Shown one piece after another: positions 18,900 through 64,000 of a stretch of 64,000 bases of DNA (positions are counted from its first letter, which is position 1; every line of letters begins with the position of its first letter). The notes under the pieces were generated by a model, which did no database searches, was not told the origin of the DNA, and saw only the letters and a list, made by a program, of their open reading frames with translations. Source of the DNA: Haliotis rubra (taxonomy: Eukaryota); NCBI RefSeq assembly GCF_003918875.1, contig NW_025765481.1:620001-684000 (forward strand), given 5' to 3'. Both the position numbers and the translations under genes were made by a program.

Positions 18900-20155
18900 C
18901 TCTAGTTTGTACAGTCGAACCCCTAGTTTGTCCAGTCGAATCACTAGTTTGTACAATCGAACCCCTAGTTTGTCCAGTCGAACCCCTAGTTTGTCAAGTC
19001 GAACCCCTAGTTTGTCCAGTCGAACCCCTAGTTTGTCCAGTCGAATCACTAGTTTGTACAGTCGAACCCCTAGTTTGTCCAGTCGAACCCCTAGTTTGTC
19101 CAGTCGAACCCCTAGTTTGTACAATCGAACCCCTAGTTTGTCCAGTCGAACCCCTAGTTTGTACAGTCGAACCCCTAGTTTGTACAATCGAACCCCTAGT
19201 TTGTACAGTCGAATCACTAGTTTGTCCAGTCGAACCCCTAGTTTGTACAGTCGAATCCCTAGTTTGTACAGTCGAATCACTAGTTTGTTCAGTCGAACCC
19301 CTAGTTTGTCCAGTCGAACCCCTAGTTTGTCCAGCCGAATCACTAGTTTGTACAGTCGAACCTCTAGTTTGTACAGTCCAATCACTAGTTTGTCCAGTCG
19401 AACCCCTAGTTTGTCCAGTCGAACCCCTAGTTTGTCCAGTCGAACTCCTAGTTTGTACAGTCGAATCACTAGTTTGTCCAGTCGAACCCCTAGTTTGTCC
19501 AGTCGAACCCCTAGTTTGTCCAGTCGAACCCCTAGTTTGTACAGTCGAACCCCTAGTTTGTACAATCGAACCCCTAGTTTGTCCAGTCGAATCACTAGTT
19601 TGTCCAGTCGAACCCCTAGTTTGTCCAGTCGAATCCCTAGTTTGTACAGTCGAATCACTAGTTTGTTCAGTCGAACCCCTAGTTTGTCCAGTCGAACCCC
19701 TAGTTTGTCCAGCCGAATCACTAGTTTGTACAGTCGAACCTCTAGTTTGTACAGTCCAATCACTAGTTTGTCCAGTCGAACCCCTAGTTTGTCCAGTCGA
19801 ACCCCTAGTTTGTCCAGTCGAACTCCTAGTTTGTACAGTCGAATCACTAGTTTGTCCAGTCGAACCCCTAGTTTGTCCAGTCGAACCCCTAGTTTGTCCA
19901 GTCAGATCCCTAGTTTGTCCAGTCGAATCACTAGTTTGTACAGTCGAACCCCTAGTTTGTCCAGTCGAACCCCTAGTTTGTACAATCACTAGTTTGTCCA
20001 GTCGAATCACTAGTTTGTCCAGTCGAACCCCTAGTTTGTCCAGTCGAACCCCTAGTTTGTCCAGTCGAACCCCTAGTTTGTACAGTCGAATCACTATAGC
20101 TAGTTTGTACAGTCGAACCAGTAGTTTGTCTAGTCGAAACACTAGTTTGTACAGC
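18900..20155. repeat. 21-bp minisatellite, ~60 copies, with a 378-bp higher-order duplication
   Basis: Unit CCTAGTTTGT(C/A)CAGTCGAACC. Confidence 0.95.
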
Positions 20156-40159: not shown

Positions 40160-43100
40160 ACGTGTTGCCCCTCATACTCCCTAACCTTCACACGTTGTCC
40201 CTCATACTCACTAACCTTTCACGTTGCCTCCCCATACTCCCTGACATTCACAAGTTGTCCCTCCTACTCCCTGACCTTCACACGTTGCCTCCCATTTCCT
40301 ACTCCCTGACCTTCACACGTTGCCCCTCACGCTCCTGACATTCCACGTTGCCCCTCACACTCCATGACCTTCACACGTTGTCCCTCATACTCCCTGACCT
40401 TCACACGTTGCCCCTCACGCTCCCCTGACCTTCACACGTTGTCCCTCACGCTCCCCTGACCTTCACACGTTGCCCCTCATAACTCCCTGATGACCTTCAC
40501 GCGTTGCCCCTCATACTCCCTGACCTTCACACGTTGTCCCTCATACTCCATGACCTTCACAGAGTTGTCCCTCAAGCTCCCAGATTATTCACACGTTCCC
40601 TGACCCTCACGCTTCCTCCCATACTCCCTCTTCACAAGTTGCTCCCTCATACTCCACTGACCTTCACACGTTGCCCCTCATACCTCCCTGAGTCTTCACA
40701 CGCGTTGTCCCTCATACCACTAACCTTTCCATTACCTCCCAGACCTTCCATTTGCCCCCTCCCACAATTCCATTCGTCCCTATTTATTCCACACAGTTGT
40801 CCCCCATTCCTTCCACTTCCTGATGCTTCCTTCCACACGTTGTCCTTTCATACCTCCACATTTCTTCCCATTGTCCTGACCTTCCACAAGGTTCACGCTT
40901 TTGCCTCCCATTCCGCACCCTTCCTCATGCTCTGACCCCTTCACACGTTGTCCTTCCATTACTCCATGATCTTCACGCGTTGCCCCTCATACTCCTGACC
41001 TTCACACGTTGTCCCTCATACTCCCTGACCTTCACACGTTGCCCCTCATACTCCCTGACCTTCACACGTTGCCCCTCATACTCCCTGATCTTCACACGTT
41101 GCCCCTCATACTCCATGACCTTCACACGTTGCCCCTCATACTCCCTCTGATCCTCACACGTTGTCCCTCCTCCCTGATCTTCACGCGTTGTCCCTCCCAT
41201 ACTCCCTGACATTCACGCGTTGCCTCCCATACTCCCTGACCTTCACACGTTGTCCCCTCATACTCCCTGATCTTCACACGTTGCCCCTCATACTCCATGA
41301 CCTTCAGACGTTGTCCTTTCATACTCCATGACCTTCACACGTTGTCCCTTCATTATTCCCCTGACCTTCCATCGCTGCCCTCATGGCTCCCTGACCTTCA
41401 CACGTTGCCCCTCACACTCCATGACCTTCACACGTTTGCCCCTCATACTCCATGACCTTCACACGTTGCCCCTCACGCTCCCTGACCTTCACACGTTGTC
41501 CCTCACGCTCCCTGACCTTCACACGTTGCCCCTCATACTCCCTGACCTTCACGCGTTGCCCCTCATACTCCCTGACCTTCACATCGTTGTCCCTCATACT
41601 CCATGACCTTCACACGTTGTCCCTCACTCACACGTTGCCCCTTCATACCTTCGATGACCTTCACACGTTGCCCCCTCATGACCTTCTACACGTTGCCCCT
41701 CTACTCTGACACGTTGTCCCTCATACTCTTCCTGACCTCACACGTTGCCTCATACTCTCTGATCTTCGTTGTCCCTCACGCCTCCCTGACATTCACACGT
41801 TGCCTCCCATACTCCCTGACCTTCACACGTTGTCCTTTCATACTCCCTGATCTTCACACGTTGCCCCTCATACTCCATGACCTTCAGACGTTGTCCTTTC
41901 ATACTCCATGACCTTCACGTTGCCCTTCATACTCCCTGACCTTCACACGTTGCCCCTCATACTCCATGACCTTCACACGTTGCCCCTCATACTCCCTGAC
42001 CTTCACACGTTGCCCCTCATACTCCCTGACCTTCACACGTTGCCCCTCATACTCCTGACCTTCACACGTTGCCCCTCACGCCCCCTCATTCACAAGCGTT
42101 GCCTCCCATACCCCTGACCTTCACATCGTTGTCCTTTCATACTCCATGACCTTCACGCTGCCCTCATACTCCCCTGACCTTCACACGTTGCCCCTCATCA
42201 TGACCTTCACACGTTGCCCTCATACCCCTGACCTTCACACGTTGCCCCTCATACTTCCTGACCTTCACACGTTGCCCTCATACTCCATGACCTTCACACG
42301 TTGCCCTCATACCCCTGACCTTCACACGTTGCCCTCATACTCCCCTGACTACACGTTGCCCCTCATAACTCCCTGACATTCACGCGTTGCCCTCATACTC
42401 CATGACCTTCACACGTTGCCCCTCATACTTCCTGACCTTCACACGTTGCCCCTCATACCCATGACCTTCAGACGTTGTCCTTCATACCATGACCTTCACG
42501 CGTTGCCCTTCATACTCCCTGACCTTCACACGTTGCCCCTCATACTCCTGACCTTCACACGTTGCCCTCATACTCCCTGACCTTCTCACACGTTGCCCCT
42601 CATACTCCATGACCTTCACACGTTGCCCCTCATACCCCTGACCTTCACACGTTGTCCCCTCATACCCCATGACCTTCAGACGTTGCCCTCGTACTCACAT
42701 GACCTTCACACGCGTTGCCCCTCATACTCTTATTGACCTTCACACGTTGCCTTCACATCGACATTTCACATCGTTGCCCCTCATACTCCCTGACCTTCAC
42801 ACGTTGTCCTTTCATACTCCCCTGACCTCACACGTTGCCCCTCATACCTCCATGACCTTCACACGTTGCCTCATACCCATGACCTTCACACGTTGCCCCT
42901 CATACCCCTGACCTTCACACGTTGTCCTTCATACTCCCTGACCTCACACGTTGCCCCTCATACTCCCTGATCTTCACAAGTTGTCCCTCACGCTCCCTGA
43001 CATTCACACGTTGCCTCCCATACTCCCTGACCTTCACACGTTGTCCTTTCATACTCCTGATCTTCACATCGCGTTGCCCCTCATACTCCATGACCTTCAG

Positions 43101-44015
43101 ACATTTCTGCTTGTCCTTTCATCATACCCCTGACCTTCACGCGTTGCCCTTCATACCCCTGACCTTCACACGTTGCCCCTCATACTCCATGACCTTCACA
43201 CGTTGCCCCTCATACCCCCTGACCTTCACACGTTGCCCCTCATACCCCATGACCTTCACACGTTGCCCCCTCATACCCCTGACCTTCACACGTTGCCCTC
43301 ACGCCTCTGACCTTCACACGCTGGCTTCCCTCATACCCTGACCTTCACAAGTTGTCCTTCATACTCCCTGACCTTCACACGTTGCCCTTCATACTCCCTG
43401 ACCTTCACACGTTGCCCCTCATACTCCCTGACCTTCACACGTTGCCCCTCATACTCCCTGACCTTCACACGTTGCCCCTCATACTCCCTGACCTTCACAC
43501 GTTTGCCCAATTCATGACCTTACTCACATGACCTTCACACGTTGCCCCTCATACTCCCTGACCTTCACACGTTGCCCTTCATACTCCTGACCTTCACACG
43601 TTGCCCCTCATACTCCATGACCTTCACACGTTGCCCCTCATACTCCATTGACCTTCACACGTTGCCCCTCATACTCCCTGACCTTCACACGTTGCCCCTC
43701 ATACTCCCTGACCTTCACACGTTGCCCTTCATACTCTGACCTTCACACGTCATACCCCTCATACCCATTGACCTTCACACGTTGCCCTTCATACTCATTG
43801 ACATTCACACGTCGTCCCTCATACTCCCTGACCTTCAGACGTTGCCCCTCGTACTCACTGACCTACACGTATATCCTCACATACTCAATGACCTAAACGT
43901 ATATCTTGACATACCCATTGAGCTGCACGTATTTCTTTACACACTCATTGACCTAAACGCATATGTGGACATACCCATTGACCTGCACGTATTTCTTCAC
44001 ACACTCATTGACACG
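40160..44015. repeat. 30-bp satellite, ~3.9 kb, many small indels
   Basis: Unit CTCATACTCCCTGACCTTCACACGTTGCCC. Confidence 0.95.
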
Positions 44016-49249: not shown

Positions 49250-49835
49250 ACGTTCCGTTATATGTGCATATATATGTATACAATACCTTCGTTTACATTT
49301 GTTTTCACATATCTATGTACACAGCACCTTCATTTATATGTGCATATATATGTATACAACGCCTTCGTTTACCTTTGTTTTCACATATCTATGTACACAG
49401 CACCTTCATTTATATGTGCATATATATGTATACAACACCTTCGTTTACCTTTGTTTGCACATATCTATGTACACAGCACCTTCATTTATATGTGCATATA
49501 TATGTATACAACACCTTCGTTTACCTTTGTTTGCACATATCTATGTACACAGCACCTTCATTTATATGTGCATATATATGTATACAACACCTTCGTTTAC
49601 CTTTGTTTTCACATATCTATGTACACAGCACCTTCATTTATATGTGCATATATATGTATACAACACCTTCGTTTACCTTTGTTTTGCACATATCTATGTA
49701 CACAGCACCTTCATTTATATGTGCATATATATGTATACAACACCATTGTTTATATGTGCATATATATGTATACAACACCTTCGTTTACCTTTGTTTTCAC
49801 ATATCTATGTACACAGTACCTTCATTATATGTGCA
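49250..49835. repeat. 76-bp tandem repeat, ~7-8 copies, built from two related halves
   Basis: TATGTGCATATATATGTATACAACACCTTCGTTTACCTTTGTTTTCACATATCTATGTACACAGCACCTTCATTTA. Confidence 0.92.
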
Positions 49836-50186
49836 TGCATGCATGCAAACAGTGCCTTTATTTATGTTTGCATGCATATATGTATACATCACCTTTTATG
49901 CATGCACCTTTGTTAGAGTTGCATGCATATTTGTTGACAGCACTTTCATTTGTGTTTGCTTGTGTATATGTATCCAGTCCCTTCGTTTATGATTGCTTGC
50001 ATATTTGTGTACAGCCCCCCCCCTCCCGTTTGTTTGTATGGGTGCATGTATACAATGCTATCATTTGTGTCTTCTTGAATGAGTTCATTTCAGTTGCCGT
50101 ACATCCCTGTATGACTCTCACGTGTGTCTGTACAAGCACAGTATAAACTTATGTCTCCTTGCCCACTTTGTATGTGCGTGTGTGCG

Positions 50187-50195
50187 TATATATAA
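50187..50195 (+). promoter_or_regulatory. Candidate TATA box for the PAN/mucin gene
   Basis: TATATATAA about 145 nt upstream of the ATG. A possible acceptor (tttcag, ending 50323) means an upstream UTR exon is also possible. Confidence 0.25.
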
Positions 50196-50334
50196 GGCTT
50201 TCCTATGTTGCAATATAGATGGAATTGCAATTCTGTGTGTATACAATTCCATCACGTGAAATGGTCACATGTATATTTGCCTAAGTTCTCTAGCTTCAGT
50301 AACACCGACGGTGTCTGTTTCAGCATCTCCTACC

Positions 50335-50401
50335 ATGGCGCCCAGATGGACGTGGGTGTTTCTGGCCGTACAGTTTGCAAGTCGGGCTCTGATTGCAACA
50401 G
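50335..50401 (+). CDS. Exon 1: signal peptide MAPRWTWVFLAVQFASRALIAT(G)
   Basis: ACCATGG Kozak context, hydrophobic core, donor ACAG|gtaagc in phase 1 matching the next exon. Confidence 0.8.
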
Positions 50402-53400
50402 GTAAGCCTATTTTTAATCCTAACTTGTGCTTCGTGTAACGTTTCTGACTGTAGACGTTTCCGCCGTGATGGGGACAGTGGGGTAGACCAGTGGTTGAAG
50501 CCCGTCACGCCGTACACGTGTGTTAAGCCCGTGTCTGGTGTCCCTCGCCTTTATATTGCTGGAATATCGCTACAAGCGGTGGGGTGTGGTGTGGTGTGGT
50601 GTGGTGTGGTGAGGTNNNNNNNNNNNNNNNNNNNNNNNNNNNNNNNNNNNNNNNNNNNNNNNNNNNNNNNNNNNNNNNNNNNNNNNNNNNNNNNNNNNNN
50701 NNNNNNNNNNNNNNNNNNNNNNNNNNNNNNNNNNNNNNNNNNNNNNNNNNNNNNNNNNCATACTGAGCCTACTCGTCGCAGTATGACATGAATATCTCAG
50801 GCGTGTTCCTACGTGGAAGCAGTAAAAGTCGACCAAAGTCTGGCGGTGTGTACGTACGTGGAAGCTGTAGAAGCCAAGTACAGTCTGACAATGTAAATTA
50901 ACGTGCATAGTGGCAGTAAAGCCAGCCATAGTCCATATAGTGTACCATAGGTTCCCGTGCTTTTTCAGCTGAATAAGTGTGTTTATGACGGGTTCCATTA
51001 ATGGGGCAGGATACGCAATTATTCTCGCGAACACCTTGTATGATAACTATTTGATTCCATCGAAACAGTATATATCTGTGATCTAGAATTAGTCCATCCT
51101 CTGACTGAAATAACTGGCGCGCCTTAACGTAATGACAATCTCGCCAGATAAGATAAGATAAAACAAACGCGAGTCCATGAAATGTTTAAAATTCGGTAAA
51201 AGCGATATCTTCCGTGGATGACAGTTTGGAATAATCTAAATACTTTTCAAACTCACAGTTGAACCAATTTCTGCCTTTCCTCTTCAAGGAGATTTCTTGT
51301 GCAATGTCAAACCTTGGCGCATACGTATTTTGGTCAGTGTCGGAATGTGATACGATACGTCCTGGGGATAATTTATCAAGATCAATGTCAGTATCAAATG
51401 AATTATTCAATAACAGGTGAAACATGCAGTTATTCTGAAGAAGTGGCGAAGAAAGGGCAGCAGGATTTGTGGAGTGGCTTTAAAAGTACTGCGGATCTCA
51501 GTGCATGCCAATCCTTCTGTGGAAGCCAGTCAGGTTGTGTAGCGGGAGAATTCAACAGCCATAGCTTTTCCTGCTACCTGTACAACGAGGTGCCGATGCT
51601 CTCTGATGACACCCAGACAACGTTCTTTCAGCGAACGTGTGTTCCAGGTAAGGACAATGTCATGTTTCCGAGAAATACATGCAGGCAATGAAGCTTTTAA
51701 TAGACAATACACTCTCATAGGTCGCTTCATATAGACGCTCGAGGATCAATACGACGGCCCAATATGGGATTTGAGAGGACATGTTCTGCTTTACAATCAC
51801 TTTTGTGCGTGATTCCATTCCTTACATTGCAATCACAACATGGCGATGTCATCAGACTGCGTTAGAGAGTGGATCCTTTTGGGTATGCTCTTTTCTCGAT
51901 CTCCTCAACTGGCACTAACTGGGAACAATTAGGCAGTCACTTAATGTGTCATTACAAGGTTGTTTTATTTTGGTCTGGATGTAGGTCCATGGTCCAAATT
52001 GTCCTCGGCAGATTACACTGGACCCTGTGTGCCAACGAGGACACCAAGCCAATACATTATTTAAAGCAGTGTTGCACGAACCCTTCAACATGACTCGTTA
52101 TCGAGTGGATGTGGTATTGGACGGTGAGACAAATCGTACGTGGGTGTCGTTCAAATAGCGTTTGATAACATGGAATATGTTTAATTATTCTAAATTGACA
52201 GTTGTCATATTGCACACGCCCACGTGTCAAAATCAAAATGGTTCCAAATTACATGTGTAAATAGTACGATCCTGTTATGGGTGTCGGTAGAACCATGACG
52301 CTAGTTGGGTGCAAGCTGTTGACGAAGTCGTGACGTTAGCTTGAGTTGAACGTCATGCAGGTGAAGATTGAGCCAAAGTGCTGGGTTGAGGCGAATGTTT
52401 GAACAGTGACATTCGGACAGTGGTGTCAGTTGACTGTCTTTCGCTAGTTCAGTCGTGACGTTGGTTTGAACCGAACGGGTGGTGGTTAAGCCTTGACGCA
52501 TTGTTTGAACTGAATGTTTTACGGGTGGTGGTTAAGCCTTGACGCATTGTTTGAACTGAACGTTTTACGGGTGGTGGTTAAGCCTTGACGCATTGTTTGA
52601 GATGAACCTTTTACGGGTGGTGGTTAAGCCATGACGCCGGTTCGACGTGAACGTTTTACGGGTGGCGGATGAGCCTCGTTATAAGAAGAGACCTTGTAAT
52701 CGATGTTGGGAGACGGAGATGAAGCAAGGTATGTTGCTCTGCATGGGTTGTGCATGCATTTGGTACCTACTACAAACACTGTCTTGAAGTAGCTCTTTAC
52801 TGTGCGTTCTCAATAATAGTTCTTCGAAACCAAAATCTAAACAAATATGGTTTGATATCACTCATTCACTCTGGGTAGTACATCCATGTAGTTCTCGATG
52901 CTTTCTGTAGGACCAGGATGGTCCAGGCGCCTAAGGGACCGTGGTGCAGAGTTGAATACCTTCCGTGTGCCCGAATCCACTGACCGTTGTTTCCAATCCG
53001 TTTCCTCACACACTTAGCGGTGTGCCTACAGAGGAACATAGTATTGAAATTCCAATGAATTGACCAGTATTCTGATCAATTAAACATCTCAAGAATCACT
53101 GTGTTCTCTCCTATACTGTGAAACATCGCAAATAAGAGAGGACCAGTTCTCAGTAGCATTATTTGAATTAACAAAATACTGAACCATGTTAGTGGAGTGA
53201 TATGCTGAATATATTCTTAAAACCCGGGTGACATGAATAAGACTGGGAATAAGTAAAAGTTTAATGTGTACAGTAAAGAGCTGCTTGAATGCCTGAGTCA
53301 GTGTTCACCCTGCACAGTGTTAACACATGGATGAACGGTTCCCGCAGTATCCCGCTTCTATACGTTCGTTAACGCTTGTAATGTTGTCCAATGTGCTGGT

Positions 53401-56400
53401 GGGTGGTTGATACACAGTGTTAACACATGGATGCACGGTTCCCGCAGGATCCCGCTTCTATACGTTCGTTAACGCCTATAATGTTGTCCAATATGCTGGT
53501 GAATGGTTAATACACATCGTTAACACATGGATGAACGGTTCCCGCCAGATCCCGCTTCTATACGTTCGTTAACGCTCTTGTAATGTTGTCCAATGTGCTG
53601 GTGGGTGGTTAATACACAGTGTTAACACATGGATGCACGGTTCCCGCAGGATCCCGCTTCTATACGTTCGTTAACGCCTATAATGTTGTCCAATATGCTG
53701 GTGAATGGTTAATACACAGTGTTAACACATGGATGCATGGTTCCCGCAGGATCCCGCTTCTATACGTTCGTTAACGCTCTTGTAATGTTGTCCAATGTGC
53801 TGGTGAATGGATACACAGTGTTAACACATGGATGCACGGTTCCCGCAGGATCCCGCTTCTATACGTTCGTTAACGCCTATAATGTTGTCCAATATGCTGG
53901 TGAATGGTTAATACACAGTGTTAACACATGGATGCACGGTTCCCGCAGGATCCCGCTTCTATACGTTCGTTAACGCTCTTGTAATGTTGTCCAATATGCT
54001 GGTGAATGGTTAATACACAGTGTTAACACATGGATGCACGGTTCCCGCAGGATCCCGCTTCTATACGTTCGTTAACGCCATAATGTTGTCCAATATGCTG
54101 GTTCCCACATCGTTAACACATGGATGCACGGTTCCCGCAGGATCCCGCTTCTATCTATGTTGTCCAATATGCTGGTGGGTGGTTAATACACAGTGTTAAC
54201 ACATGGATGCACGGTTCCCGCAGGATCCCGCTTCTATACGTTGTTAACGCCTATAATGTTGTCCAATATGCTGGTGAATGGTTAATACACAGTGTTAACA
54301 CATGGATGCACGGTTCCCGCAGGATCCCGCTTCTATACGTTCGTTTACGCTCTTGTTATGTTGTCCAATATGCTGGTGAATGGTTAATACACAGTGTTAA
54401 CACATGGATGCACGGTTCCCGCAGGATCCCGCTTCTATACGTTCGTTAACGCTCTTGTAATGTTGTCCAATATGCTGGTGGGTGGTTAATACACAGTGTT
54501 AACACATGGATGCACGGTTATACGTTCGCGCTCTTGTTATGTTGTCTAATGTGCTGGTGGGTGGTTTATACACATTGTTAAATCATGGACGCATGGTTCC
54601 CGAAAGATCCCACTGATAAACATTCGTTAACGCCCTTGTGATATTGTCCAATGTGCTGGTGGGTGGTTTATACTCATTGCAACCTACATGCACTGAACCA
54701 TCTTATTAACTTGACGTTTACGAAAGAAGAGGACTTTAATGTTACATCTTGTGTAACTGAGCTATACCTTTTTCATCATACCACATTACGTTCTACAAGT
54801 TTATCCATTTCTAGCGGTTGGAGAAATGCTTATTTATATGGACTTGGTGATATTTATTCACAGTGATACGATTTGCTCAGCTGCCCTAAGTTTCGTTTGA
54901 TACACCTCCATGAAATCATGCATAGTCCACAACACTTTTACGTAATACCGTTTATGTGAGGCTCGGAGCTTCTCAGTCAAGTGAACTCTCAAAATGTAAA
55001 CTGCAAACACATCCACATTCAGTGGTATCAGTTGTTGTCCACCTCTCAGAAGGTGTCAAGAGTGTGTCAGTGGAACAATGCACATCCGAATAAACAGAAT
55101 TGCAGTTGCGGTGTCAAGATTTGTTGCTTCGGGCACATTTTGCGCCGGAAGGACCAAAAAAGAAAGAGTTGTCGTTATTAATACTTTGTCATTCCAATGT
55201 GTCTTTAGTATTTTAAAGTGTCACTTGAGGTCCATTCATATTTTGAGTCATAATTCCTTGTGCATTGTTGCTTTCCTCAGGAGTGCCAAAAACCTGTGAT
55301 CGAGTGTGGCAAATTGCTCATTTTTGTGACATCCATATTTGATTAACAATAATTTGAACAAGATATCTTTAGGCTACCTTATAGCGTGTCTTATCAGTAA
55401 GTACAATCATAAAGTAATCAGAACGAAAATCACTTGAAGAGAAATAATTACGAAAAGACGAGAATGTTTGGATATATTGGATACATCAAGCAGACTTTTA
55501 CACAACACAGATATACTAATAAGCTTCATGTACAAGAATAAATCACCAGAGCATAATCAAAATTGATTATCCACGCCACTGGGCGAAAAAGACAAAACAG
55601 CTGTCAAAACTTGTATGAACAGAATGCTGCAAGTCAGTGACGTCACCAGGTCTCCCAAAAATACGGTCATCATATCCTGCTCTTCCTGTAGCACGTCTCA
55701 CACATAGTGTTCTCTTGTTGGTCCAACGCCATTGAGCCTGAAACCGTCTCTGCCAAGACATGTTCCTATCAGGTGACAACATTGGTACTGAAAATGACCT
55801 TTCCCCATATATACTGTATATTTGCAAGTCATACCTGTTTCGTCTTTGTCACAATACGCCCGATGTGTTTACAGCTGTTTATCCAGACTCTGCTATGCTG
55901 ATATTTGCATATTGCGCCTAACAAAGGGACACTACCAACCACCGACTGGTTTAAAGTTACCGTATATAGTTACTGGACTCAACCTTAGTGTGAGGGTTTA
56001 TGGCCGTTTGAAGGTATATTAGCTTTTATGTGGATGGGCGGATTTTGTGTTACTTTTTCGCGGAGTACGCCAATTTGAAATACGTTGGCGCATTGCACTG
56101 AAGTCACCATTGCAAACACCATTTCGTAAGAAACATGCTTGTTCCTAGCAATCTGGTCTGTCTCACAGCCAATGAACCGCTTTACTTTCCCCACTGCTTA
56201 TACCTCCCTGCAATGCGGCTAAAAATATAAATGAAGCAAGTCTAGATTCCCTCAATTTCCCATCTGACGGGGGCTCTGTTCAATTCAAATGGGTTTATGT
56301 GTTACTATCAAAATTATATATATTCAGAGACTAGGCAATAGTCTACAAGCAATCATGAACGCGGACTTTATTATCATTATAAATAACATGGATCATACCG

Positions 56401-59400
56401 TCTCGGCAATTATATTACCAATATCGATCGACAATGATTACCAGTATCAAGCATTATTGATTACCACAGATTGCCATGATGATTCAATCAATATTAATAA
56501 GTAAACAAATTATAATGAGAGGTATCTGTCCTACGGTTAGATATTTCATCATTTAAATTGATGCATCTTCTGTTAATGTAAGCATTTTGAATTTATATCA
56601 GACACGACCACTGCAGGAACAACCGTTACAGCAACGACATCAGATGCTACGACAGTTGCAACGCGTACGTCGACAGGTATACACAACTTTGTGTATGTGC
56701 TGGTACAGGCTATGCGGCCATGATGTAACACTATCTTGCTACTGTGTACCCCATCTTGTTATTAGTAATATAAATAAAATACACCTACACTGTTTTTTTG
56801 TATCTAGTAAATAAAATATATTTATGGTTGGAATGTAAAGCGAAAACAATTTTTCTCATCATCACTGATTATTTGTATTAGCAACAACGACCGCAGCTAC
56901 CATTGTAACGTCAACTACACCCACACCTACAACACGTACAACGTCTGCATTTTCAGGTATGATGAAAATGATGATGATGATGATGATGATGAAGATGATG
57001 ATAATCATTACTTTGATACTTACACATGTGTAGCAATTCACGAGAATGATTTACACTACATGGTTCCGTTTTTGTTTATGTAAACATTTGTGCCTTTGCA
57101 TGTGTTTGTGACGGATAGTGACACATGCTTATGATTATATTATCATAATGGAATCGTAATGTCAAGTCTAGGATGACATTTCCTGTAAAGGAGAGAATTA
57201 CGCCGCTTTTATTTATGCATCTAAATACCATTGATGCCCAAAGACAATAAATTAATTCATTTGGTGGAGGGTTGGTGAACTGAGGTTCAATATCCCGATC
57301 AAGATTATTATCTTCAACAGGTGCCTCCAACGTGTGTGTGTGTGTGTGTGTGTGCGTGTGCGTGTGCGTGTCTGTTCGCGTGCGTGCGTGTGTGTTTATA
57401 TTTGTGTATATATGCTTGTACTTGTCCTGACCTAAAGTTATTAAGCTGTTTACTTTAAGGTTTACGGGTACTATAAATATATAAGCTGAACCCACGGCAA
57501 ATATGTAAATAGGCAAACTAAGGTAATGGCGATTGCCTTGCTTTGTTGATTATTGCTAAATGGAATTATCATTGCCGCTTCTAGTCGCTACCTCGATAAT
57601 AAGTGACCTCTCCCTTAGATACATCTTTGATGCAATATATATACATGTATGTCAAATCTATTATGCCGATGTCTTTTTAACGAAAAATAACTTTTCTGTA
57701 TTGTTTTCATTACACTACATAGTTTTCACTGAATATGGAAAAAGGTTTTTGTCGCTTTTTTAATCCATCTATTTGTCAACAGCTAGATCCAATCATCCAT
57801 CCAATCATCAATTCCTCCATCCAATCATGCTGTCCACCATCTAATCATCTGTCCACTCTTCCCCACTGCATCCTTCCACGGTGTTCTGTATGCATGTAAC
57901 CACTAACCAAAGTCGTATGCAGCACAACTATACCTGTATGCAAGAGTGGCCTTGCAGAACCTTTATACAACTCATCTGTGTAAAAATCCGCTACAAATGT
58001 AACTGCGGTGTTTTATTATCAATGCTGTCACCAGGCCATCTATCATCTAAGCCTTTCTTTGTCAAGTTTCACATTACTGTTGATTAAACTAGATAAATGA
58101 CAACATAGATTATGGTAATGACAGAACTATTAAAGTAACAGTCCAATAGTGTTTGATTTTACATGTTAAATTGACGTTAATATGTAAGTTATGGTTAATT
58201 TAGAAACGATGTTGAAGTTTAGAAATGAAAGAACAATAACTGTAATAATACATTTCATTGTTTATTCTAATAACTATGTGGCATGTCCATTAATATAATG
58301 AAAAGTGACCTTTTTCAGACGCAACGACAACGACGTTAGCATCAACAACCACTCCAACAACCACTCCAACGACTACACCAACAACCACATCAACAACCGC
58401 CCCAGCATCATGTAACATGACAAGATCGTCAGGTACGACAGGTGTGTCAGGTTTTACAAGTTTTCTCTCCGCAATGTTGAATCCTGCAATAGCATCTGTC
58501 TGTATATCATGACATGCCGAGCCACCACATACAGACTAGGTATCTGCACATTGTACCCCGGGACGTCTACTGCAGCATCTGGGGACATCGTCGACTTCGT
58601 CAGGCATGCATGCAATAACGGTACGTGTCAATCTTCATTTCCGCCTTCTTATATTACGTTTCTGGTACCACTAAGAAGGAAGTTCACCTGACCGTTAGTC
58701 CGAGTCTAGTAACAATCTAGACGGTCAAGTTGTTTAGCCATCAAATACAGTAAACTGTTATAATAGCCACTAGTTGCAGTCTAGTTGGGTATGACAAATA
58801 GAAGCTACTCCTGGTAAGGGAAGTAAAACAGACTCCAACGGGTAAGACAACCCCGTACCCATGCTAGTACACGCTCATGTGAAACATATTATTCCGTTTA
58901 AACAGCCCTTACTTTAATACAAAAGCACAAAATAAACCGAGAGTGTTTTTCCACACGTTCTGAATCTCCCACATGACTGGGGTTCCTTTTCAATGGAACT
59001 CATTGTTTCTGTCAAAATTGTATATTATCAGAGACAAAGCGTTGGTCTTCCTGCCATGCCCCAGTTGTCGCTAGTTACTGTACAGAGTAGCGTCCCTTGG
59101 GCACGTCAGAAACCTGTGATCCTCGTTTCGAATAACGGTTCGGGGTTCTTATGTTTCTGGGTTTGTCTAGGTTTATAGTTTGTATACTGTGAAACACGGT
59201 ATCAAATCTAACTCACTGACTAAAGCAAAATGTACAGTTGCAACAACAGCTGCAACAACAGCTGCAACAACAGCTGCAACAACAGCTGCAACAACAAACC
59301 CAGTATCCCCGAACGTCATAGTTGCTGTCTACCGCGGAAGAATTTACCTTTAAAGCATACACCATCTACAGGCAACGGACGCTGGGGCAGCCCACTGGTT

Positions 59401-62400
59401 AAAGCGTTCGCACGTCACGCCGAAGACCCGGGTTCGATTCCCCACATGGGTACAATGTGTGAAACCCATTTCTGGTAACACCGCCGTGGTATTGCTGGAA
59501 TTTTGCCAAAAGTGGCGTAAAACGATATTCACTCTCTCATCTACAGGTACATTCTGCTGCATAAGCTCCAGCACAACACAGAGGGCTAGTGGCAGTCCCC
59601 TTCTCTCCATCAGTACTACTGCATCTTTAGACGGATGTGAAGCGATCTGTCTCGCAGTGGCTGACTGTCAGGGCACATACTACAGCGACAATTCCTGCTT
59701 CTTCTATACAACTACATCAACGACATTTGGCGGAAGAATCGTTTTCTCCAGGAAGACCTGTCCTGGTAACAACTGAGAGTAGCCATTTTGGTTTATTTTA
59801 CGCTCCACTCAACAGTATTCTATCTATATAACGTCGGTATATAGATAATCGAGTCTGGACCAGACAACCCGATGGGTGACATCATGAGCATTGATCTACA
59901 TAGTTAGGATGCTATGACATGCCGTGGGCCTCCCCACAAGATACCCTTAACTTTGGTTTGCTGTAGATATACCCGGATCTTGATATATATATAGTACGTC
60001 ATGTTCTGTTTGAAAGTCTGACGTCAAACGTCTTCTTAAAATGCACCGGATATATTTCGTTGAAACATTTAACACTGTTAACGCAAGGTACGACTACCCG
60101 GAATAGAAGGGACACATTTGACCAAAACATTACAAACGTAAAAAAAACATGTACTAGGCTTCAGAATTTACGTAACAAACATACTGGTATCCATATCAAA
60201 CACATAACCAGTTATAGATATATGCATGATTTCGTACAAATATGCCCATGTTTACATGATGTTCAAATACAACACCCAATAGTAAACAAACATATTTCTT
60301 TCAGTCCAAACTAATCCTGGGAACCTTGCATTCGATGGTGCCTGCAAAGGTATGACAACAATTAGCACTATCTGTGGTAGGTAAAGTGGCGTTGATGACA
60401 GGTTATATATTCAATACTGACTTAAACGGTCAGAGTGTTTCTGGCAAAGTATGAACTTGAAGAAAATGTGTTACTCTTTCTTAAGTTCAAATAGCAGGAA
60501 TACCCGCTCTGTTTCCTCTAGAGTCTGTTCGCTCAAGGTTTTCTACAGTTTAGAACTGAAGAAGTTCGTTCGTCCATTTTCATATAATGTTCACAGCTCT
60601 ATTTCCTTATTCACCAAACGAAATGTGTTTCTAAGGACACTAAGACTGGTTATTCCTTTGCACTATCGTTCTGTATTACATTCAACGAAAATACTGAAAC
60701 ATTAAAATATTAACTGTACATCTGCTCTAAGATTACGAACATTTATAATGAGCAATATTTTCGGATGAGCTAAACAGTGAGCGAATATACCAGCCATTTA
60801 AATGCACCTCTTGCATCACCATAAACAGAAATGATGATTGATGTGATTTCTATAATTATATTAAAATTTATATTTCTTGAAATGGTTCAAGACAAGGCCC
60901 TCATGTCTTTACAAGATAAGTAGTGGGCGGACATATACCACGCACACACAACGTCATTCTTAAGAAATTGATTCTATTTCAGAACGCCCCAAATGGACAT
61001 ATACTAGGTATCTTCAGTACAGTTATAGTTTTTGTTGCCACGTTCTGCATCTGTTATAATGGTGTCTGTGTTGTTACAGGTGCTATGTTCTAACATCAGA
61101 GGCCTGTGGATGTATCTCACACTTCCAATAAACACATAATACAATACGTTTTACTAATATAACGTAACCGTATCATCGTTACTCGGCTAATCTCATGTGT
61201 CGTGTTATGAAATCACAGTGAGTGAGTGAGTGAGTGAGTGAGTCTTCCTCCGCTTTTCACAATATTCCATCAATGTCACCACTCTAGAACGGGCCTCAAG
61301 CACTCTGCCTGTGTTGGGAAACGAACCGTGGTCTTGTGCATGACGAAAGGAAAACGCTTTACCAATAGGGTACTGACTTTCCTGGTAAATGGCTGTTGTC
61401 GTGTCCTTGTGGTTCTCGTCACACTGTGTCTTGAAATACTTACATTTAACACCTCCATTTAACTAGTTATATCTCAATAACCTAACGTGGACGAGAGGTT
61501 CGTATTTAACACCATAACTATAGTTAGTAGTTAAAAGACGAATTAATTAACTACTTGAATGGAAAATTTCGAATGACCGAAAGCTTACCCTTTCGCTCAA
61601 TACGTTGTTTTAATAAATAGGTAAATCTATTATCAATGATGGCATTCAGAGAAATTTTGGAAAGAAAGTATACACTTACATGAAACATTACTAGGCTGTT
61701 AACTCTCTCACCGAGCATTGCGAACTTAGGTTTCGAAACACAACTACTCGTGTACCCGTATGACATCGTTCATTATTGAATAACCATTCCTTAAAACTAA
61801 AATGAAATATGGGTGTATACCTTATTTTGCCCGGCAGTGTAGTTTGTTACTAAGACCGACATACACGTCTATGTGTTGAGCATGTTAATAGCATGTAAGG
61901 TGTTGTTTCAGTTTCTACCACAACAACAACGTGTACATCATGCGGCGGTATGTACCGGCATGTGGTAAACATTTAATATGCAAAGAACATGTTGACAGCG
62001 CACCTGATGAAGCAATGAACACTGACATCATACATAACTAACATCGAACACGTACACAGCAAGAGAATGCTACCCCACCGCCAGATAAAGCAATGAACAC
62101 TGACATCGATGATACAAAGAGATCTAGAGACAGAGAGAGAGTCAGAGAGATACTTTACCCTTTCCACCTTCCCTCCCTTACAGCAAAAGTATTGAACTTG
62201 GTATTTAGCGTCAATAAAATCACTGTTTGCACCTACTATATTCCATTTCGCACTCAGGTCTTCAAGTAACATCGCTCCTAATTAAAAAGCATGTATGTTT
62301 TCTAAATATTAACACGATTTTGTTTTCATTTCAGATACCAACAACTCAGCTTCTTCTCGTATTATCCATGGCATTATTATCGGTACTTAAATATTCTGCT

Positions 62401-62756
62401 AAATGTGAAGATAGTACCATCATCATCATCATCATCATCATCATTGCCGTTGTCGTTTTTATGCTCTGGCAACATTATTGTTAATTTGATATTGTTAATA
62501 TCATAATGTAAAATGGTTAAATCTTTAATTAAATTTATAAAATTTATGACATAATTAATCCAAGTGTATATAAAAACCAGATTGCAGCACAACGTTGATT
62601 TTAACACGATGATGTGAACACAATAATTACAATTAAACACATATTTCCTCGTTCGATTAAGAAATGCGCATTGTACATATGAAAATAAAAGTAACAAAGA
62701 ATTTGTTGTTTCTTTCAGCGTTCCTGATTATACATATTTCTTGGACCCTTTTCTAG
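50335..62756 (+). CDS. Multi-exon gene: signal peptide + 3 PAN/Apple-like domains + Thr-rich mucin stalk + GPI-anchor-like C-terminus (~378 aa; one -1 frameshift in exon 5)
   Basis: Hand-built exons 50335-50401, 51417-51647, 56602-56676, 56882-56956, 58319-58620, 59547-59765, 60305-60349, 61912-61947, 62335-62382, 62719-62756. All introns are GT-AG and phase 1. Every internal exon is a multiple of 3 except exon 5 (302 nt). Kozak ACCATGG at the start; AATAAA at 62856. Confidence 0.82.
50616..50758. other. Assembly gap (N) in intron 1, after a (GTGTG)n tract
   Basis: N run. Confidence 1.
51417..51647 (+). CDS. Exon 2: PAN/Apple-like domain 1
   Basis: taacag|GT...CCAG|gtaagg, 231 nt; ETC...ACQSFCGSQSGCVAGEFNSHSFSCYLY...RTC gives the six-Cys C-x3-C-x5-C pattern. 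Confidence 0.88.
52475..52668. repeat. 46-bp tandem repeat x4 (intron 2)
   Basis: GGGTGGTGGTTAAGCCTTGACGCATTGTTTGAACTGAA.GTTTTAC. Confidence 0.9.
53313..54675. repeat. 100/102-bp tandem repeat, ~13 copies (intron 2)
   Basis: TAACACATGG recurs at 53321, 53421, 53521 and onward; alternating GCCTATAAT / GCTCTTGTAAT variants. Confidence 0.93.
56602..56676 (+). CDS. Exon 3: Thr-rich mucin-like segment (D)TTTAGTTVTATTSDATTVATRTST
   Basis: atatcag|AC...ACAG|gtatac, 75 nt, phase 1-1. Confidence 0.8.
56882..56956 (+). CDS. Exon 4: Thr-rich segment (A)TTTAATIVTSTTPTPTTRTTSAFS
   Basis: gtattag|CA...TCAG|gtatga, 75 nt, phase 1-1. Confidence 0.8.
58319..58620 (+). CDS. Exon 5: Thr-rich linker + PAN/Apple-like domain 2 (-1 frameshift at ~58461)
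   Basis: tttttcag|AC...AACG|gtacgt. First frame ATTTTLASTTTP...SCNMTRSSGTTGVSGFTS; second frame FSLRNVESCNSICLYIMTCRATTYRLGICTLY...RHACNN. One extra T in the T4 run joins them and makes the exon 303 nt. Confidence 0.82.
59373..59537 (+). mobile_element. SINE family A inserted at the exon-6 splice acceptor
   Basis: Family sequence flanked by CATCTACAGG at 59363-59372 and 59538-59547. Confidence 0.85.
59547..59765 (+). CDS. Exon 6: PAN/Apple-like domain 3
   Basis: ctacag|GT...CCTG|gtaaca, 219 nt; TFCC...GCEAICLAVADCQGTYYSDNSCFFY...RKTCP. Confidence 0.85.
60305..60349 (+). CDS. Exon 7: (V)QTNPGNLAFDGACK
   Basis: tttctttcag|TC...AAAG|gtatga, 45 nt, phase 1-1, open. Confidence 0.7.
61217..61380 (-). 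mobile_element. SINE family A, old diverged copy
   Basis: (GTGA)n tail and weak core similarity. Confidence 0.6.
61912..61947 (+). CDS. Exon 8: (V)STTTTTCTSCG
   Basis: ttgtttcag|TT...GGCG|gtatgt, 36 nt, phase 1-1, Thr-rich like the other stalk exons. Confidence 0.68.
62335..62382 (+). CDS. Exon 9: (D)TNNSASSRIIHGIII, putative omega-site region
   Basis: ttttcatttcag|AT...ATCG|gtactt, 48 nt, phase 1-1. Confidence 0.68.
62719..62756 (+). CDS. Exon 10 (terminal): (A)FLIIHISWTLF*
   Basis: tttctttcag|CG; completes the hydrophobic tail; TAG at 62754-62756; AATAAA about 100 nt downstream. Confidence 0.68.
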
Positions 62757-62855
62757 TGCTCTTTCTTTTCGAAGAACTCTTGTGACTGACTGACAAAATG
62801 GTGATGACTTTGATACAGCGGTGGAAGGAAGAATTCGGGACAATCTGACAAAAGG

Positions 62856-62861
62856 AATAAA
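62856..62861 (+). terminator. Candidate polyadenylation signal of the PAN/mucin gene
   Basis: AATAAA 100 nt after the predicted stop. Confidence 0.45.
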
Positions 62862-63676
62862 AACTAATGAGTAAATGTGTAGCGCAGAACCTTGATGTGT
62901 GTAGTTCAGAAATCCCTCTGCCCTAGGTATTTACTGGCACTTAATGTAGAATACCAAAGAGCATGGAGCACAGCTGTGCTGCATCAGATAAACTACATCT
63001 ACAAATACAATATCGAAAGTAACGAATCTTTCTCACCCGTAATCACTTATTTACAAGGAGAAAATCCATACAGTTCTTAGCTTTATACCAGCTTTAAATA
63101 TTTACTATATATTATTCATGTACAATGTTCCCTCTTTGTATTGTTTCTTTTTTCACAGGTTATGGATGGTCTAAGGTAGCATTATTCACTGTACTGAGTT
63201 GCGGCCATTAGAAATACCAAAATCCATTGCGTGTTAATCGTTTATTAACAAAAAACGTGCTATATAGTGTAAGAAATACATAGGTCTTAGGCGGTTACCA
63301 GTTAGGCTAAAAGACAGGAAAGTATAAATTACCTTTCTCATTGAGTAAACTAGAACTGTTAGAATTAGCTTTCAATATATAAAATTGTTGCATGAAATTG
63401 ATGCATTTACAAAAACAGCGATGATGAGACTGCCTCTTGTTTTCATTAGCAAAAATATCCGGTTGCATTAATTATGGATCTGATGTAGGAATCTCTGCCG
63501 CAGAACCTCTATGTCTGAACATATATGTCTGGTTCATCTAATGATGTGTATGTTTGTGCAAGCACGTGTACTGCAGCTGAGGACACGCAGGCGTGCCCCT
63601 GCTTAAGACATTGTAGAATCGTTGTAAGTATTGCTGTGCACATATAAATATTGTTGTTATAACTATTACAGACTAT

Positions 63677-63844
63677 ATATAGAACAAACTTTATGGATAA
63701 CAACTTCTTTTTATTCGTGAGTGCGACGTTTCGATACAGATTCTTGTACCGTTGTCAAGCATAATGGAACGGTACAAGAATCTGTATCGAAACGTCGCAC
63801 TCACGAATAAAAAGAAGTTGTTATCCATAAAGTTTGTTCTATAT
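63677..63844. mobile_element. Penelope-like element remnant: 77-bp perfect inverted repeat (inverted pseudo-LTR)
   Basis: Arms 63677-63753 and 63768-63844, 14-nt spacer; contains a hammerhead motif and AATAAA. Confidence 0.75.
63722..63761 (-). ncRNA. Minimal type-I hammerhead ribozyme motif (Penelope-type)
   Basis: Minus strand reads UGC-UUGACAA-C-GGUACA-agaauc-UGUAUC-GAAAC-GUC-GCA: stem I UGC/GCA, U3-A8 compensated core, 6-bp stem II, palindromic ACGU helix III. Confidence 0.7.
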
Positions 63845-64000
63845 TGTACTTCCCAACTTCTAAATGCCACTCAAAGAAGTTATCACAGACTACTCCCAAA
63901 CTGCTTAAAGTGCATATCAGTTATGTATATTTTTGTGCCTTTTTATCTTGACTATCCCTCTGTTGTTTACAATGATGTGCAAAAATATCTTGACATAGTA

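What the first reader, a model, noticed from the sequence alone, without database searches (positions are those of the whole stretch)
50335..62756. Hidden modular gene: GPI-anchor-like surface mucin with three PAN/Apple domains, all introns phase 1
Seen: ten exons, mostly missed by the ORF track, splice through GT-AG phase-1 junctions into signal peptide - PAN1 - Thr-rich stalk (~80 aa) - PAN2 - PAN3 - short Cys/Thr linker - NNSASSRIIHGIIIAFLIIHISWTLF*. Established: the six-Cys C-x3-C-x5-C layout is the PAN/Apple fold (carbohydrate or protein binding). Small residues followed by a terminal hydrophobic run with no cytoplasmic tail is the GPI-signal pattern, and symmetric phase-1 exons typify shuffled extracellular modules. 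Inference: a lineage-specific cell-surface recognition or mucus protein presenting one distal PAN on an O-glycosylated stalk. Because the internal exons are symmetric, skipping could tune stalk length and domain number.
Basis: partly seen in the sequence, partly recalled or inferred. Interest (0 to 1): 0.75.

Follow-up and report, generated by a model that had tools for sequence, protein, structure and literature searches.

The report
Abalone PAN-domain surface mucin gene
This is a real, transcribed blacklip-abalone gene for a cell-surface glycoprotein with three PAN/apple binding modules and a sugar-coated stalk; it belongs to a familiar protein design, but this assembly breaks its reading frame once, and splicing gives it two alternative tails.

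Summary
The gene exists at the stated coordinates on the + strand of Haliotis rubra contig C591.

- **Folds and motifs:** PAN1 passes Pfam's PAN_1 cut-off and folds (pLDDT 96) like solved PAN/apple domains. PAN2 and PAN3 carry the same Cys motif but score below the cut-off.
- **Transcription:** spliced contigs from three RNA-like runs of a near relative join exon 5 to exon 6 exactly. By arithmetic they then run exon 7, exon 9, exon 10.

Three corrections:

1. Exon 5 has a one-base frame break inside PAN2, near 58453. All four runs laid carry one extra base there. RefSeq's own model of this locus (183 aa) is truncated for that reason.
2. Exon 8 is absent from the anchor-frame transcripts and from anchor-frame orthologues.
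3. An overlooked 25-nt exon (60983-61007), with or without exon 8, shifts exons 9-10 into a second frame. This gives a non-anchor tail in gene models of three Haliotis species.

The N gap lies in intron 1. GPI anchoring fits by inspection but was not tested.

Full-length orthologues are already in RefSeq for H. asinina and H. cracherodii. This scan noted paralogous PAN-mucins elsewhere in this genome. It is a new member of a known kind.

The parts
50335..50401 (+). Exon 1: start codon and signal-peptide-like segment (22 codons plus 1 base, donor GT)
   Evidence: It is 79% identical to the N-terminus of H. asinina P0001. It has an n-region with Arg, an 11-residue hydrophobic core and small residues at -3 and -1 (read directly; no SignalP was run).
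50616..50758 (.). Assembly gap (N) inside intron 1, behind a SINE-like stretch and a GGTGT microsatellite
   Evidence: It is not in coding sequence in this model. The readable part of intron 1 holds no PAN0-like exon. H. cracherodii has an optional extra PAN exon at this position, so a hidden exon cannot be excluded.
51417..51647 (+). Exon 2: PAN1 (231 nt, phase 1-1, six Cys)
   Evidence: Pfam PAN_1 scores 22.9 bits against a cut-off of 21.4. The AlphaFold2 model has pLDDT 96.2. Foldseek matches the HGF N domain, the plasminogen PAp domain, FXI apple domains, SML-2 and TgMIC4 at TMq 0.72-0.80.
56602..56676 (+). Exon 3: 75-nt Thr-rich cassette (13 Thr in 24 residues)
   Evidence: It lies outside the stretch laid with reads. 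Similar 24-25-aa cassettes are included or skipped in H. cracherodii isoforms.
56882..56956 (+). Exon 4: 75-nt Thr-rich cassette
   Evidence: The depth in its bin in runs X1 and X4 fits a 75-nt exon at the depth of the spliced contig.
58319..58620 (+). Exon 5: Thr/Pro-rich stalk end plus PAN2, with a one-base frame break near 58453 in this assembly
   Evidence: Two frames are needed to read it. All four runs laid have one extra A behind 58453, and a 12-nt extra stalk unit behind 58342 (table 4). The PAN2 piece scores 17.1 bits on PAN_1. Orthologues read straight through.
59547..59765 (+). Exon 6: PAN3 (219 nt, phase 1-1, seven Cys)
   Evidence: Contigs of X1, X2 and X4 join 58619 to 59546 with no letters between (table 8). 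PAN_1 scores 17.4 bits and PAN_3 16.8 bits. It is 82% identical to P0001.
60305..60349 (+). Exon 7: 45-nt linker with one Cys
   Evidence: The depth in its bin in X1, X2 and X4 equals about 46-48 nt at contig depth. It is present in all orthologue isoforms.
60983..61007 (+).
   Evidence: It is part of RefSeq's H. rubra model P0067, checked exon by exon with AG/GT borders. Counterparts of 25 and 43 nt (sizes inferred from the protein lengths) are in the H. asinina X2 and H. cracherodii X9 models. Only X4 shows trace depth in its bin.
61912..61947 (+). Exon 8: 36-nt optional exon, seen only together with exon 7b and read in frame B
   Evidence: Depth is zero in X1 and X2 and a trace in X4. It is absent from the spanning X1 contig by arithmetic. 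It is present in P0067 and has a counterpart in P0062, but is absent from every isoform with the hydrophobic tail.
62335..62382 (+). Exon 9: 48 nt, read in two frames. Frame A gives small residues (Asn-Asn-Ser-Ala-Ser-Ser) and the start of the hydrophobic run; frame B is rich in Tyr and Trp.
   Evidence: It is fully covered at contig depth in X1, X2 and X4.
62719..62785 (+). Exon 10, coding part: frame A stops at TAG 62754-62756 and frame B at TGA 62783-62785. The 3' UTR runs on.
   Evidence: RNA-like contigs run without a break from 62718 to the end of the laid stretch at 62860, and the X1 contig has 1171 more letters (table 8).

Best explanation
This is a transcribed Haliotis rubra gene, the full form of RefSeq LOC124270626. 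It encodes a secretory-pathway surface glycoprotein.

**Architecture.** A signal peptide is followed by PAN/apple module 1, held on a Thr-rich and probably O-glycosylated stalk. Two 75-nt cassette exons plus a repeat of variable length build that stalk. Two further PAN modules sit in tandem below it, then a short Cys-bearing linker. The tail has small residues followed by a roughly 19-residue hydrophobic run that ends the protein.

**Main mRNA.** It uses exons 1-7, 9 and 10. The tail most likely acts as a GPI-attachment signal; failing that, it is a tail-less membrane anchor.

**Second isoform.** It includes a 25-nt exon, with or without the 36-nt exon 8. This shifts the last two exons into another frame and replaces the anchor with a Tyr/Trp-rich tail. 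That form probably gives a released protein.

**Function.** The PAN modules are inferred to bind a glycan or protein ligand at an epithelial or mucus surface.

**Frame break.** The single-base break in PAN2 is more likely an assembly error, or an allele of the sequenced animal, than loss of the gene.

**Shown:** the exons, the splice borders, the PAN1 fold, the exon 5-6 junction, the use of exons 7, 9 and 10, and the orthologues.

**Inferred:** glycosylation, the GPI anchor, release of the second isoform, and the ligand.
For: - **Exon model:** AG/GT borders and phases check out.
- **PAN1:** Pfam PAN_1 is above the gathering score. The AlphaFold2 model has pLDDT 96.2. The top Foldseek PDB matches are all PAN/apple domains at TMq 0.72-0.80. 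A profile of this gene's three PAN modules and paralogue PAN exons finds TgMIC4, SML-2, HGF and EtMIC5 among the solved structures.
- **PAN2 and PAN3:** they share the Cys pattern and align with PAN1 and its paralogues. The orthologue P0002 scores 53.6 bits on PAN_1 with three stretches.
- **Transcription:**
  - Contigs of X1, X2 and X4 cover exons and skip introns.
  - They join exon 5 to exon 6 exactly.
  - The X1 contig has 95 letters between exon 6 and exon 10. That equals 3 nt plus exon 7 (45) plus exon 9 (47).
  - The DNA run X5 is colinear with the genome, introns included.
- **Orthologues:** they have the same order of parts. H. asinina P0001 is 73-86% identical exon by exon; H. cracherodii P0002 is about 63-83%.
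- **Anchor:** the paralogue P0013 has a classical TM helix and a polybasic tail, whereas this gene has no conserved basic tail.
- **Frame-B isoform:** it appears in models of three species, and the length of the inserted exon is 1 modulo 3 in each. X4 shows trace depth on both optional exons, and its contig ends at the 3' edge of exon 7.
Against: - The assembly as it stands does not encode the whole protein, because the reading stops inside PAN2. None of the runs found holds half of this DNA's words or more (best share 0.28). The extra base therefore comes from a relative or a divergent haplotype, not demonstrably from the sequenced animal.
- The runs are RNA only by guess. That they are RNA rests on the spliced contigs themselves.
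- No SignalP or GPI predictor was available. In H. asinina and H. cracherodii the hydrophobic run is followed by 5 and 12 further residues, which is less typical of a GPI signal.
- The full-length model of the orthologue was useless (pLDDT 32), so the PAN2 and PAN3 folds are not shown.
- Isoform B rests on automatic gene models plus trace depth in one run.
Confidence: 0.7

Rival explanations
1. The one-base deletion in PAN2 is real in H. rubra, or in the sequenced animal. The locus would then be a young pseudogene or null allele that makes at most a truncated signal-PAN1-stalk protein, or an N-terminally truncated product from the internal Met as RefSeq modelled it.
For: The frame break is in the assembly. 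RefSeq's model starts at the internal Met at 58509. No near-identical DNA run was found to contradict it. Decayed copies of the PAN3 exon on the same contig show that this family sheds pieces.
Against: Every other exon is open with intact splice sites. The coding parts are about 98% identical to expressed contigs of a near relative that carry the extra base, and the DNA run carries it too. Three orthologous proteins read through this point. A single lesion with no other damage fits an assembly indel, or at most a very recent allele.
Confidence: 0.25
2. The C-terminal hydrophobic run is a transmembrane anchor with little or no cytoplasmic tail, not a GPI signal. The protein would be a type I membrane mucin like its paralogues.
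For: The run is strongly hydrophobic: exon 10's frame-A part averages 1.92 on the Kyte-Doolittle scale. It is about 25 residues long in the orthologues, followed by 5-12 more residues.
Against: There is no conserved basic stop-transfer residue after the run. The stop position differs in all three species. A conserved cluster of small residues (Asn-Asn-Ser/Thr-Ala-Ser) sits just ahead of the hydrophobic run, where an attachment site would be. All of this is read by eye.
Confidence: 0.3
3. The frame-B isoform (25-nt exon with or without exon 8) is splicing noise or an artefact of automatic annotation, with no protein function. Only the anchor-frame product matters.
For: It has no depth in X1 and X2 and only traces in X4. 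The frame-B tail matches no known family. Judged by eye from the alignment, it is less conserved between H. rubra and H. cracherodii than frame A.
Against: Independent gene models in three species contain it. The inserted exon keeps a length of 1 modulo 3 although its size differs (25 against 43 nt, inferred from the proteins). Frame B stays open to a stop in the last exon, so nonsense-mediated decay is not expected.
Confidence: 0.35

Closest known systems
RefSeq orthologues: H. asinina XP_067673104 ('location of vulva defective 1-like' X3, 327 aa) and H. cracherodii XP_071108088 with its isoforms X1-X9
   Same: They have the same order of parts: signal peptide, PAN1, Thr-rich stalk, PAN2, PAN3, Cys linker, small residues and a hydrophobic tail. 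Identity exon by exon is 73-86% for H. asinina and about 63-83% for H. cracherodii. They also have the same alternative frame-B tail.
   Different: The H. asinina models have no 75-nt cassette exons. H. cracherodii has up to eight cassettes and an extra, skippable PAN module after the signal peptide. Both continue 5-12 residues past the point where the H. rubra frame stops. Their names come from low-complexity matches and say nothing about function.
RefSeq's own model of this locus: H. rubra LOC124270626 (P0067, 183 aa, 'uncharacterized protein')
   Same: It uses the same exons 5 (part), 6, 7, 8, 9 and 10, and matches the window exactly exon by exon.
   Different: It starts at an internal Met inside PAN2 because of the frame break. 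It therefore lacks the signal peptide, PAN1 and the stalk. It shows only the frame-B tail.
Paralogous Haliotis PAN-mucins in the same tandem cluster, for example H. rufescens XP_048248643 ('integumentary mucin C.1-like') and earlier scan notes s1-344933 and s1-327985
   Same: They share a signal peptide, one PAN head of 30-38% identity and a Thr-rich stalk. The paralogues found on contig C591 lie on its + strand.
   Different: The paralogues have one PAN (or PAN-mucin-PAN), a classical TM helix and a polybasic cytoplasmic tail. This gene has three PANs and a tail-less hydrophobic end.
Apicomplexan microneme apple-domain adhesins (TgMIC4, Sarcocystis SML-2, EtMIC5)
   Same: These are the best sequence-profile matches among solved structures and good fold matches at TMq 0.75-0.80. 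They are tandem apple modules used for binding at a cell surface. SML-2 is a lectin crystallised with a thio-galactoside, according to its PDB titles.
   Different: Sequence identity is only 15-22%. They have no mucin stalk and no membrane anchor of this kind. Sugar binding was not tested here.
C. elegans LET-653 (PAN domains, mucin-like linker and ZP domain; PMC4970718, abstract only)
   Same: It combines PAN modules and a mucin-like region in an apical extracellular glycoprotein.
   Different: LET-653 ends in a ZP domain. No ZP domain was found here.
HGF/plasminogen N-terminal (PAp) domains and factor XI/prekallikrein apple domains
   Same: They share the fold: top Foldseek matches at TMq 0.72-0.77 with rmsd 1.8-3.2 Å.
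   Different: Identity is 10-15%. Those are parts of protease or growth-factor chains and have no mucin stalk.

Membership tests
PAN/Apple domain (Pfam PF00024 and its clan) | Match to the family HMM at or above the gathering score | tested here: met
   PAN1 scores 22.9 bits against 21.4. PAN2 (17.1) and PAN3 (17.4) fall below the cut-off on their own, with E-values of 0.004-0.005. The orthologue P0002 scores 53.6 bits with three stretches.
PAN/Apple domain (Pfam PF00024 and its clan) | Conserved Cys framework: C ... C-x3-C-x5-C-x9/11-C ... C | tested here: met
   It is present in all three modules. In PAN2 it is present only when read across the frame break.
PAN/Apple domain (Pfam PF00024 and its clan) | Apple fold: a curved antiparallel sheet packed on one helix | tested here: met
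   For PAN1 only: AlphaFold2 pLDDT 96.2 with a strand-strand-helix-strand-strand-strand order. The Foldseek matches listed at E <= 0.001 are all PAN/apple domains. PAN2 and PAN3 were not folded.
Mucin-like (PTS) stalk | Long stretch dominated by Thr, Ser and Pro, with repeat units | tested here: met
   There are 43 Thr, 8 Ser and 6 Pro in 78 residues across exons 3, 4 and the start of exon 5. A 12-nt stalk unit is present in one more copy in the runs laid.
Mucin-like (PTS) stalk | Dense O-glycosylation | not testable with these tools
   This needs glycoproteomics or lectin blots.
GPI-anchored proteins | N-terminal signal peptide | tested here: inconclusive
   The sequence has n, h and c regions with small residues at -3 and -1, conserved in the orthologues. 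No predictor was run.
GPI-anchored proteins | C-terminal signal: small residues at and after the attachment site, a short spacer, then a hydrophobic run to the very end | tested here: inconclusive
   The H. rubra frame fits by inspection. The orthologues add 5-12 residues after the run. No NetGPI or PredGPI was available.
GPI-anchored proteins | Release by PI-PLC, or a lipid-modified C-terminus | not testable with these tools
   This is an experiment.
PAN-mucin-ZP matrix proteins (LET-653 type) | C-terminal ZP domain | tested here: not met
   No ZP match in the exon peptides scanned or in the orthologues.

The most novel reading that the evidence does not exclude
A conserved frame-shifting micro-exon acts as a switch. 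Its length is 1 modulo 3 in three Haliotis species. Including it makes the same two terminal exons read in a second frame, which swaps a membrane-anchor (GPI-type) tail for a Tyr/Trp-rich soluble tail. One gene would then supply both a tethered and a released PAN-mucin, with both overlapping frames kept open by selection across the genus.
Probability: 0.4. Interest if true: 0.5.

Novelty: new member of a known kind. Interest (0 to 1): 0.35.

Why it matters
- **Annotation:** it corrects the annotation of one abalone gene. The public model is a 183-aa fragment; the locus holds a protein of about 365 aa with a signal peptide, three PAN modules and a stalk.
- **Gene family:** it adds a three-PAN, tail-less member to a tandem family of PAN-mucins that has so far been found only in abalone. 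These proteins are candidates for surface recognition, mucus organisation or microbe binding in a farmed mollusc. None has a known function.
- **Splicing switch:** if the two-frame use of the last exons is confirmed, it would be a compact example of anchored-versus-released switching through a frame-shifting micro-exon.
- **Assembly quality:** single-base frame breaks in this assembly can truncate gene models without any warning.

Tried and rejected
- **Mini-intron to explain the exon 5 frame break:** the candidate GT...AG pairs inside it span 9, 18 or 28 nt. None removes 2 modulo 3, so this was rejected by reading the sequence.
- **Extra PAN exon in intron 1, as in H. cracherodii:** there is no match in the readable part. 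The N gap was left untouched.
- **Thr/Ala-coding repeat at 59207-59317 in intron 5 as a further stalk exon:** by my reading its length between the candidate AG and GT is 65 nt, so it would break the phase. It has almost no depth in the RNA-like runs. Rejected.
- **Tail exons 7, 9 and 10 against paralogue regions:** no matches; the queries are too short.
- **Full-length fold of the orthologue P0001:** pLDDT 32, unusable.
- **Word search with the frame-B tail of P0058:** it returned only the cluster representative, because isoforms are hidden inside 90% clusters.
- **Literature:** nothing on abalone PAN/apple mucins.
- **Rfam at gathering score over 50000-64000:** no hit.
- **The look-up of encoding contigs:** No orthologue DNA could be fetched, so no codon-level test of the two overlapping frames was possible.
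- **Joined spliced protein:** it was never built or sent to any tool. All searches used single exons by reference, or database proteins.


Full report
**Where we are.** The window is G000:C591:620001-684000 (+) of a 1.378-Gb animal assembly. A RefSeq protein of Haliotis rubra sits on a contig of exactly C591's length, 1,852,494 bases. The genome is therefore the blacklip abalone.

**The observation.** I located the ten exons by their flanks. They are 50335-50401, 51417-51647, 56602-56676, 56882-56956, 58319-58620, 59547-59765, 60305-60349, 61912-61947, 62335-62382 and 62719-62756.
- Every acceptor is AG and every donor GT, with pyrimidine-rich acceptor contexts.
- Apart from exon 5, the internal exons are multiples of three in length: 231, 75, 75, 219, 45, 36 and 48 nt. 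Exon 1 ends in phase 1, so the 'all phase 1' pattern holds for this path.
- The peptides are as described. There is a signal-peptide-like start and three modules with C-x3-C-x5-C. The stalk has 43 Thr in 78 residues. The tail has small residues followed by a hydrophobic run that ends at TAG 62754-62756.

**The gap.** The N run at 50616-50758 lies in intron 1, after a SINE-like stretch and a GGTGT microsatellite.
- It does not touch coding sequence in this model, and the phases on both sides match.
- The H. asinina orthologue joins the exon-1 and exon-2 peptides directly.
- H. cracherodii has an extra, skippable PAN exon at exactly this position. The readable part of intron 1 has nothing like it.
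- Whether the gap hides such an exon cannot be told. I did not try to fill it, and no read across the exon 1-2 junction was laid.

**First correction: a frame break in PAN2.** Exon 5 is 302 nt. The stalk end and the first Cys of PAN2 are in the 58321 frame, and the rest of PAN2 is in the 58320 frame. The straight reading meets a stop.
- The four runs laid all carry one extra A behind 58453, which keeps one frame through the domain. Three of these runs are RNA-like and one is DNA.
- They also carry a 12-nt extra stalk unit behind 58342 (table 4).
- The orthologous proteins read through this point.
- None of the runs holds half or more of this DNA's words: the best share is 0.28, and the DNA contigs differ by about 4% in introns. 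They come from a near relative or a divergent haplotype.
- The break is therefore either an assembly indel or a real allele of the sequenced animal. I favour the former at about 3:1, because nothing else in the gene is damaged.

**Is it PAN?** Yes for PAN1.
- Pfam PAN_1 scores 22.9 bits against a cut-off of 21.4.
- An AlphaFold2 model of the exon-2 peptide, built with 24 relatives, has pLDDT 96.2.
- Its best PDB matches are the HGF N domain, leech antiplatelet protein, the plasminogen PAp domain, factor XI and prekallikrein apple domains, SML-2 and TgMIC4, at TMq 0.72-0.80.
- A sequence profile of the family finds TgMIC4, SML-2, HGF and EtMIC5 among solved chains.
- PAN2 and PAN3 score 17.1 and 17.4 bits, below the cut-off. 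They keep the Cys framework and align with PAN1 and its paralogues. The H. cracherodii orthologue scores 53.6 bits with three stretches.

**Is it transcribed and spliced as proposed?** Only one lay of at most 6 kb was allowed, so I laid 56870-62860.
- Runs X1, X2 and X4 are labelled RNA only by guess. Their contigs cover exons, leave most intron bins empty and skip introns. The DNA run X5 is colinear with the genome.
- Contigs in all three runs join 58619 to 59546 with no letters between, which is the exon 5-6 junction.
- The 2119-nt X1 contig then has 95 letters before it resumes at 62718. That equals 3 nt of exon 6, exon 7 (45) and exon 9 (47, its last G being ambiguous with 62718).
- The bins holding exons 7 and 9 have the depth expected from 46-49 nt at contig depth. 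The bin holding exon 8 has zero depth in X1 and X2.
- Exon 4's bin is covered in X1 and X4.
- The same contig runs unbroken through the stop into the 3' UTR and has 1171 further letters. No other terminal exon is used.
- Exons 1-3 lie outside the laid stretch and rest on the orthologues.

**Second and third corrections: exon 8 and a missed exon.** A search of 1.84 billion representative proteins with the PAN1 exon was needed, because exon-sized queries cannot reach full-length kin in the word search, and because the 'lineage-specific' claim rests on absence of relatives. It gave two strong hits, both Haliotis.
- The anchor-frame isoforms of H. asinina and H. cracherodii go from the exon-7 peptide straight to the exon-9 peptide.
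- RefSeq's own model of this locus is LOC124270626 (183 aa). It starts at the Met inside PAN2. It then uses exon 6, exon 7, a 25-nt exon at 60983-61007, exon 8, and exons 9-10 in a different frame, ending at TGA 62783-62785.
- I checked every piece against the window.
- The same alternative tail is found in H. asinina isoform X2 (25-nt exon only) and in H. cracherodii isoform X9 (a longer counterpart plus an exon-8 counterpart). Sizes are inferred from the proteins. In each case the inserted length is 1 modulo 3.
- In X4 alone, the bins holding the 25-nt exon and exon 8 have trace depth, and the main contig stops at the 3' edge of exon 7, as at a branch.

**Anchor.** Frame A gives small residues, a short spacer and about 19 hydrophobic residues to the stop.
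- The orthologues keep the small-residue cluster and the hydrophobic run, but end 5 and 12 residues later. They have no conserved basic residues and different stops.
- A paralogue has a classical TM helix with a polybasic tail.
- This pattern favours a GPI signal over a TM anchor, but only by inspection.

**Family and range.**
- The PAN1 exon has at least eight paralogous copies on the + strand of the same contig and one on another contig, each followed by Thr-rich exons.
- Weaker PAN2- and PAN3-like exons lie 26-30 kb downstream of the window. Two decayed PAN3 copies lie on the minus strand.
- Outside Haliotis the best matches (E of 3e-10 or weaker) are generic apple-domain proteins of dinoflagellates, fungi and octopus.
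- Earlier notes of this scan describe two paralogous PAN-mucin loci in this genome. I found no paper on them.

**Stalk tuning.** H. cracherodii isoforms X1-X9 differ by whole 24-25-aa Thr cassettes, from none to about eight, and one skips a PAN exon.

**Verdict.** This is a real gene and an ordinary member of an abalone-restricted PAN-mucin family. It is partly annotated already. It has a frame break in this assembly and a neat two-frame tail switch that deserves a cDNA check.

**Limits.**
- The joined spliced protein was never built or searched.

Noticed in passing
The spliced contigs use the acceptor at 59546/59547. The SINE itself attracts enormous depth from all runs, as a repeat would.
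   Followed up: partly
Rfam at gathering score found nothing in 50000-64000. If the X1 contig is colinear with the genome, its 1171 extra letters would place the fold-back inside the transcribed 3' region.
   Followed up: partly
window 53313-54673 and 52475-52676: Intron 2 holds a satellite of about 100/202 bp (roughly 6 to 8.5 units) and a 46-bp array.
   Followed up: no
window 59207-59317: A (GCAACAACAGCT)n stretch in intron 5 would code a Thr/Ala repeat like the stalk. By my reading, its length between the candidate splice sites is 65 nt, so it is out of phase. It has almost no RNA-like depth. It may be a decayed stalk exon.
   Followed up: partly
G000:C591:316501-316685 (-) and 692207-692341 (-): Two decayed copies of the PAN3 exon, 62-71% identical, lie on the opposite strand. 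The main matches carry 2-3 stop codons each.
   Followed up: no
G000:C591:705-715 kb (loci L012, L018): PAN2-like (710258) and PAN3-like (714460) exons and further PAN exons lie on the + strand. A 600-nt Thr-rich open stretch lies at about 686.2-686.9 kb. This is probably the next gene or genes of the cluster.
   Followed up: partly
window 40164-43868: A 3.7-kb satellite of 30/60-bp units explains the G+C of 0.53 and the GC skew of -0.58 in that part of the window.
   Followed up: no
window 18902-20154: A 21-bp unit is repeated about 60 times at 88% match. It gave weak Thr-rich matches in both directions. It was not examined for coding.
   Followed up: no
window 49258-49752 and 50187-50197: A 76-bp tandem array (6.5 copies, 97% match) lies just upstream of the gene. 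A TATATATAAGG motif lies 138 nt before the start codon and could be its TATA box. This is read from the sequence only.
   Followed up: no
window 62780: The T>C difference seen in all four runs falls in a Leu codon of frame B (TTG to CTG, silent) and after the frame-A stop. A single data point proves nothing.
   Followed up: no
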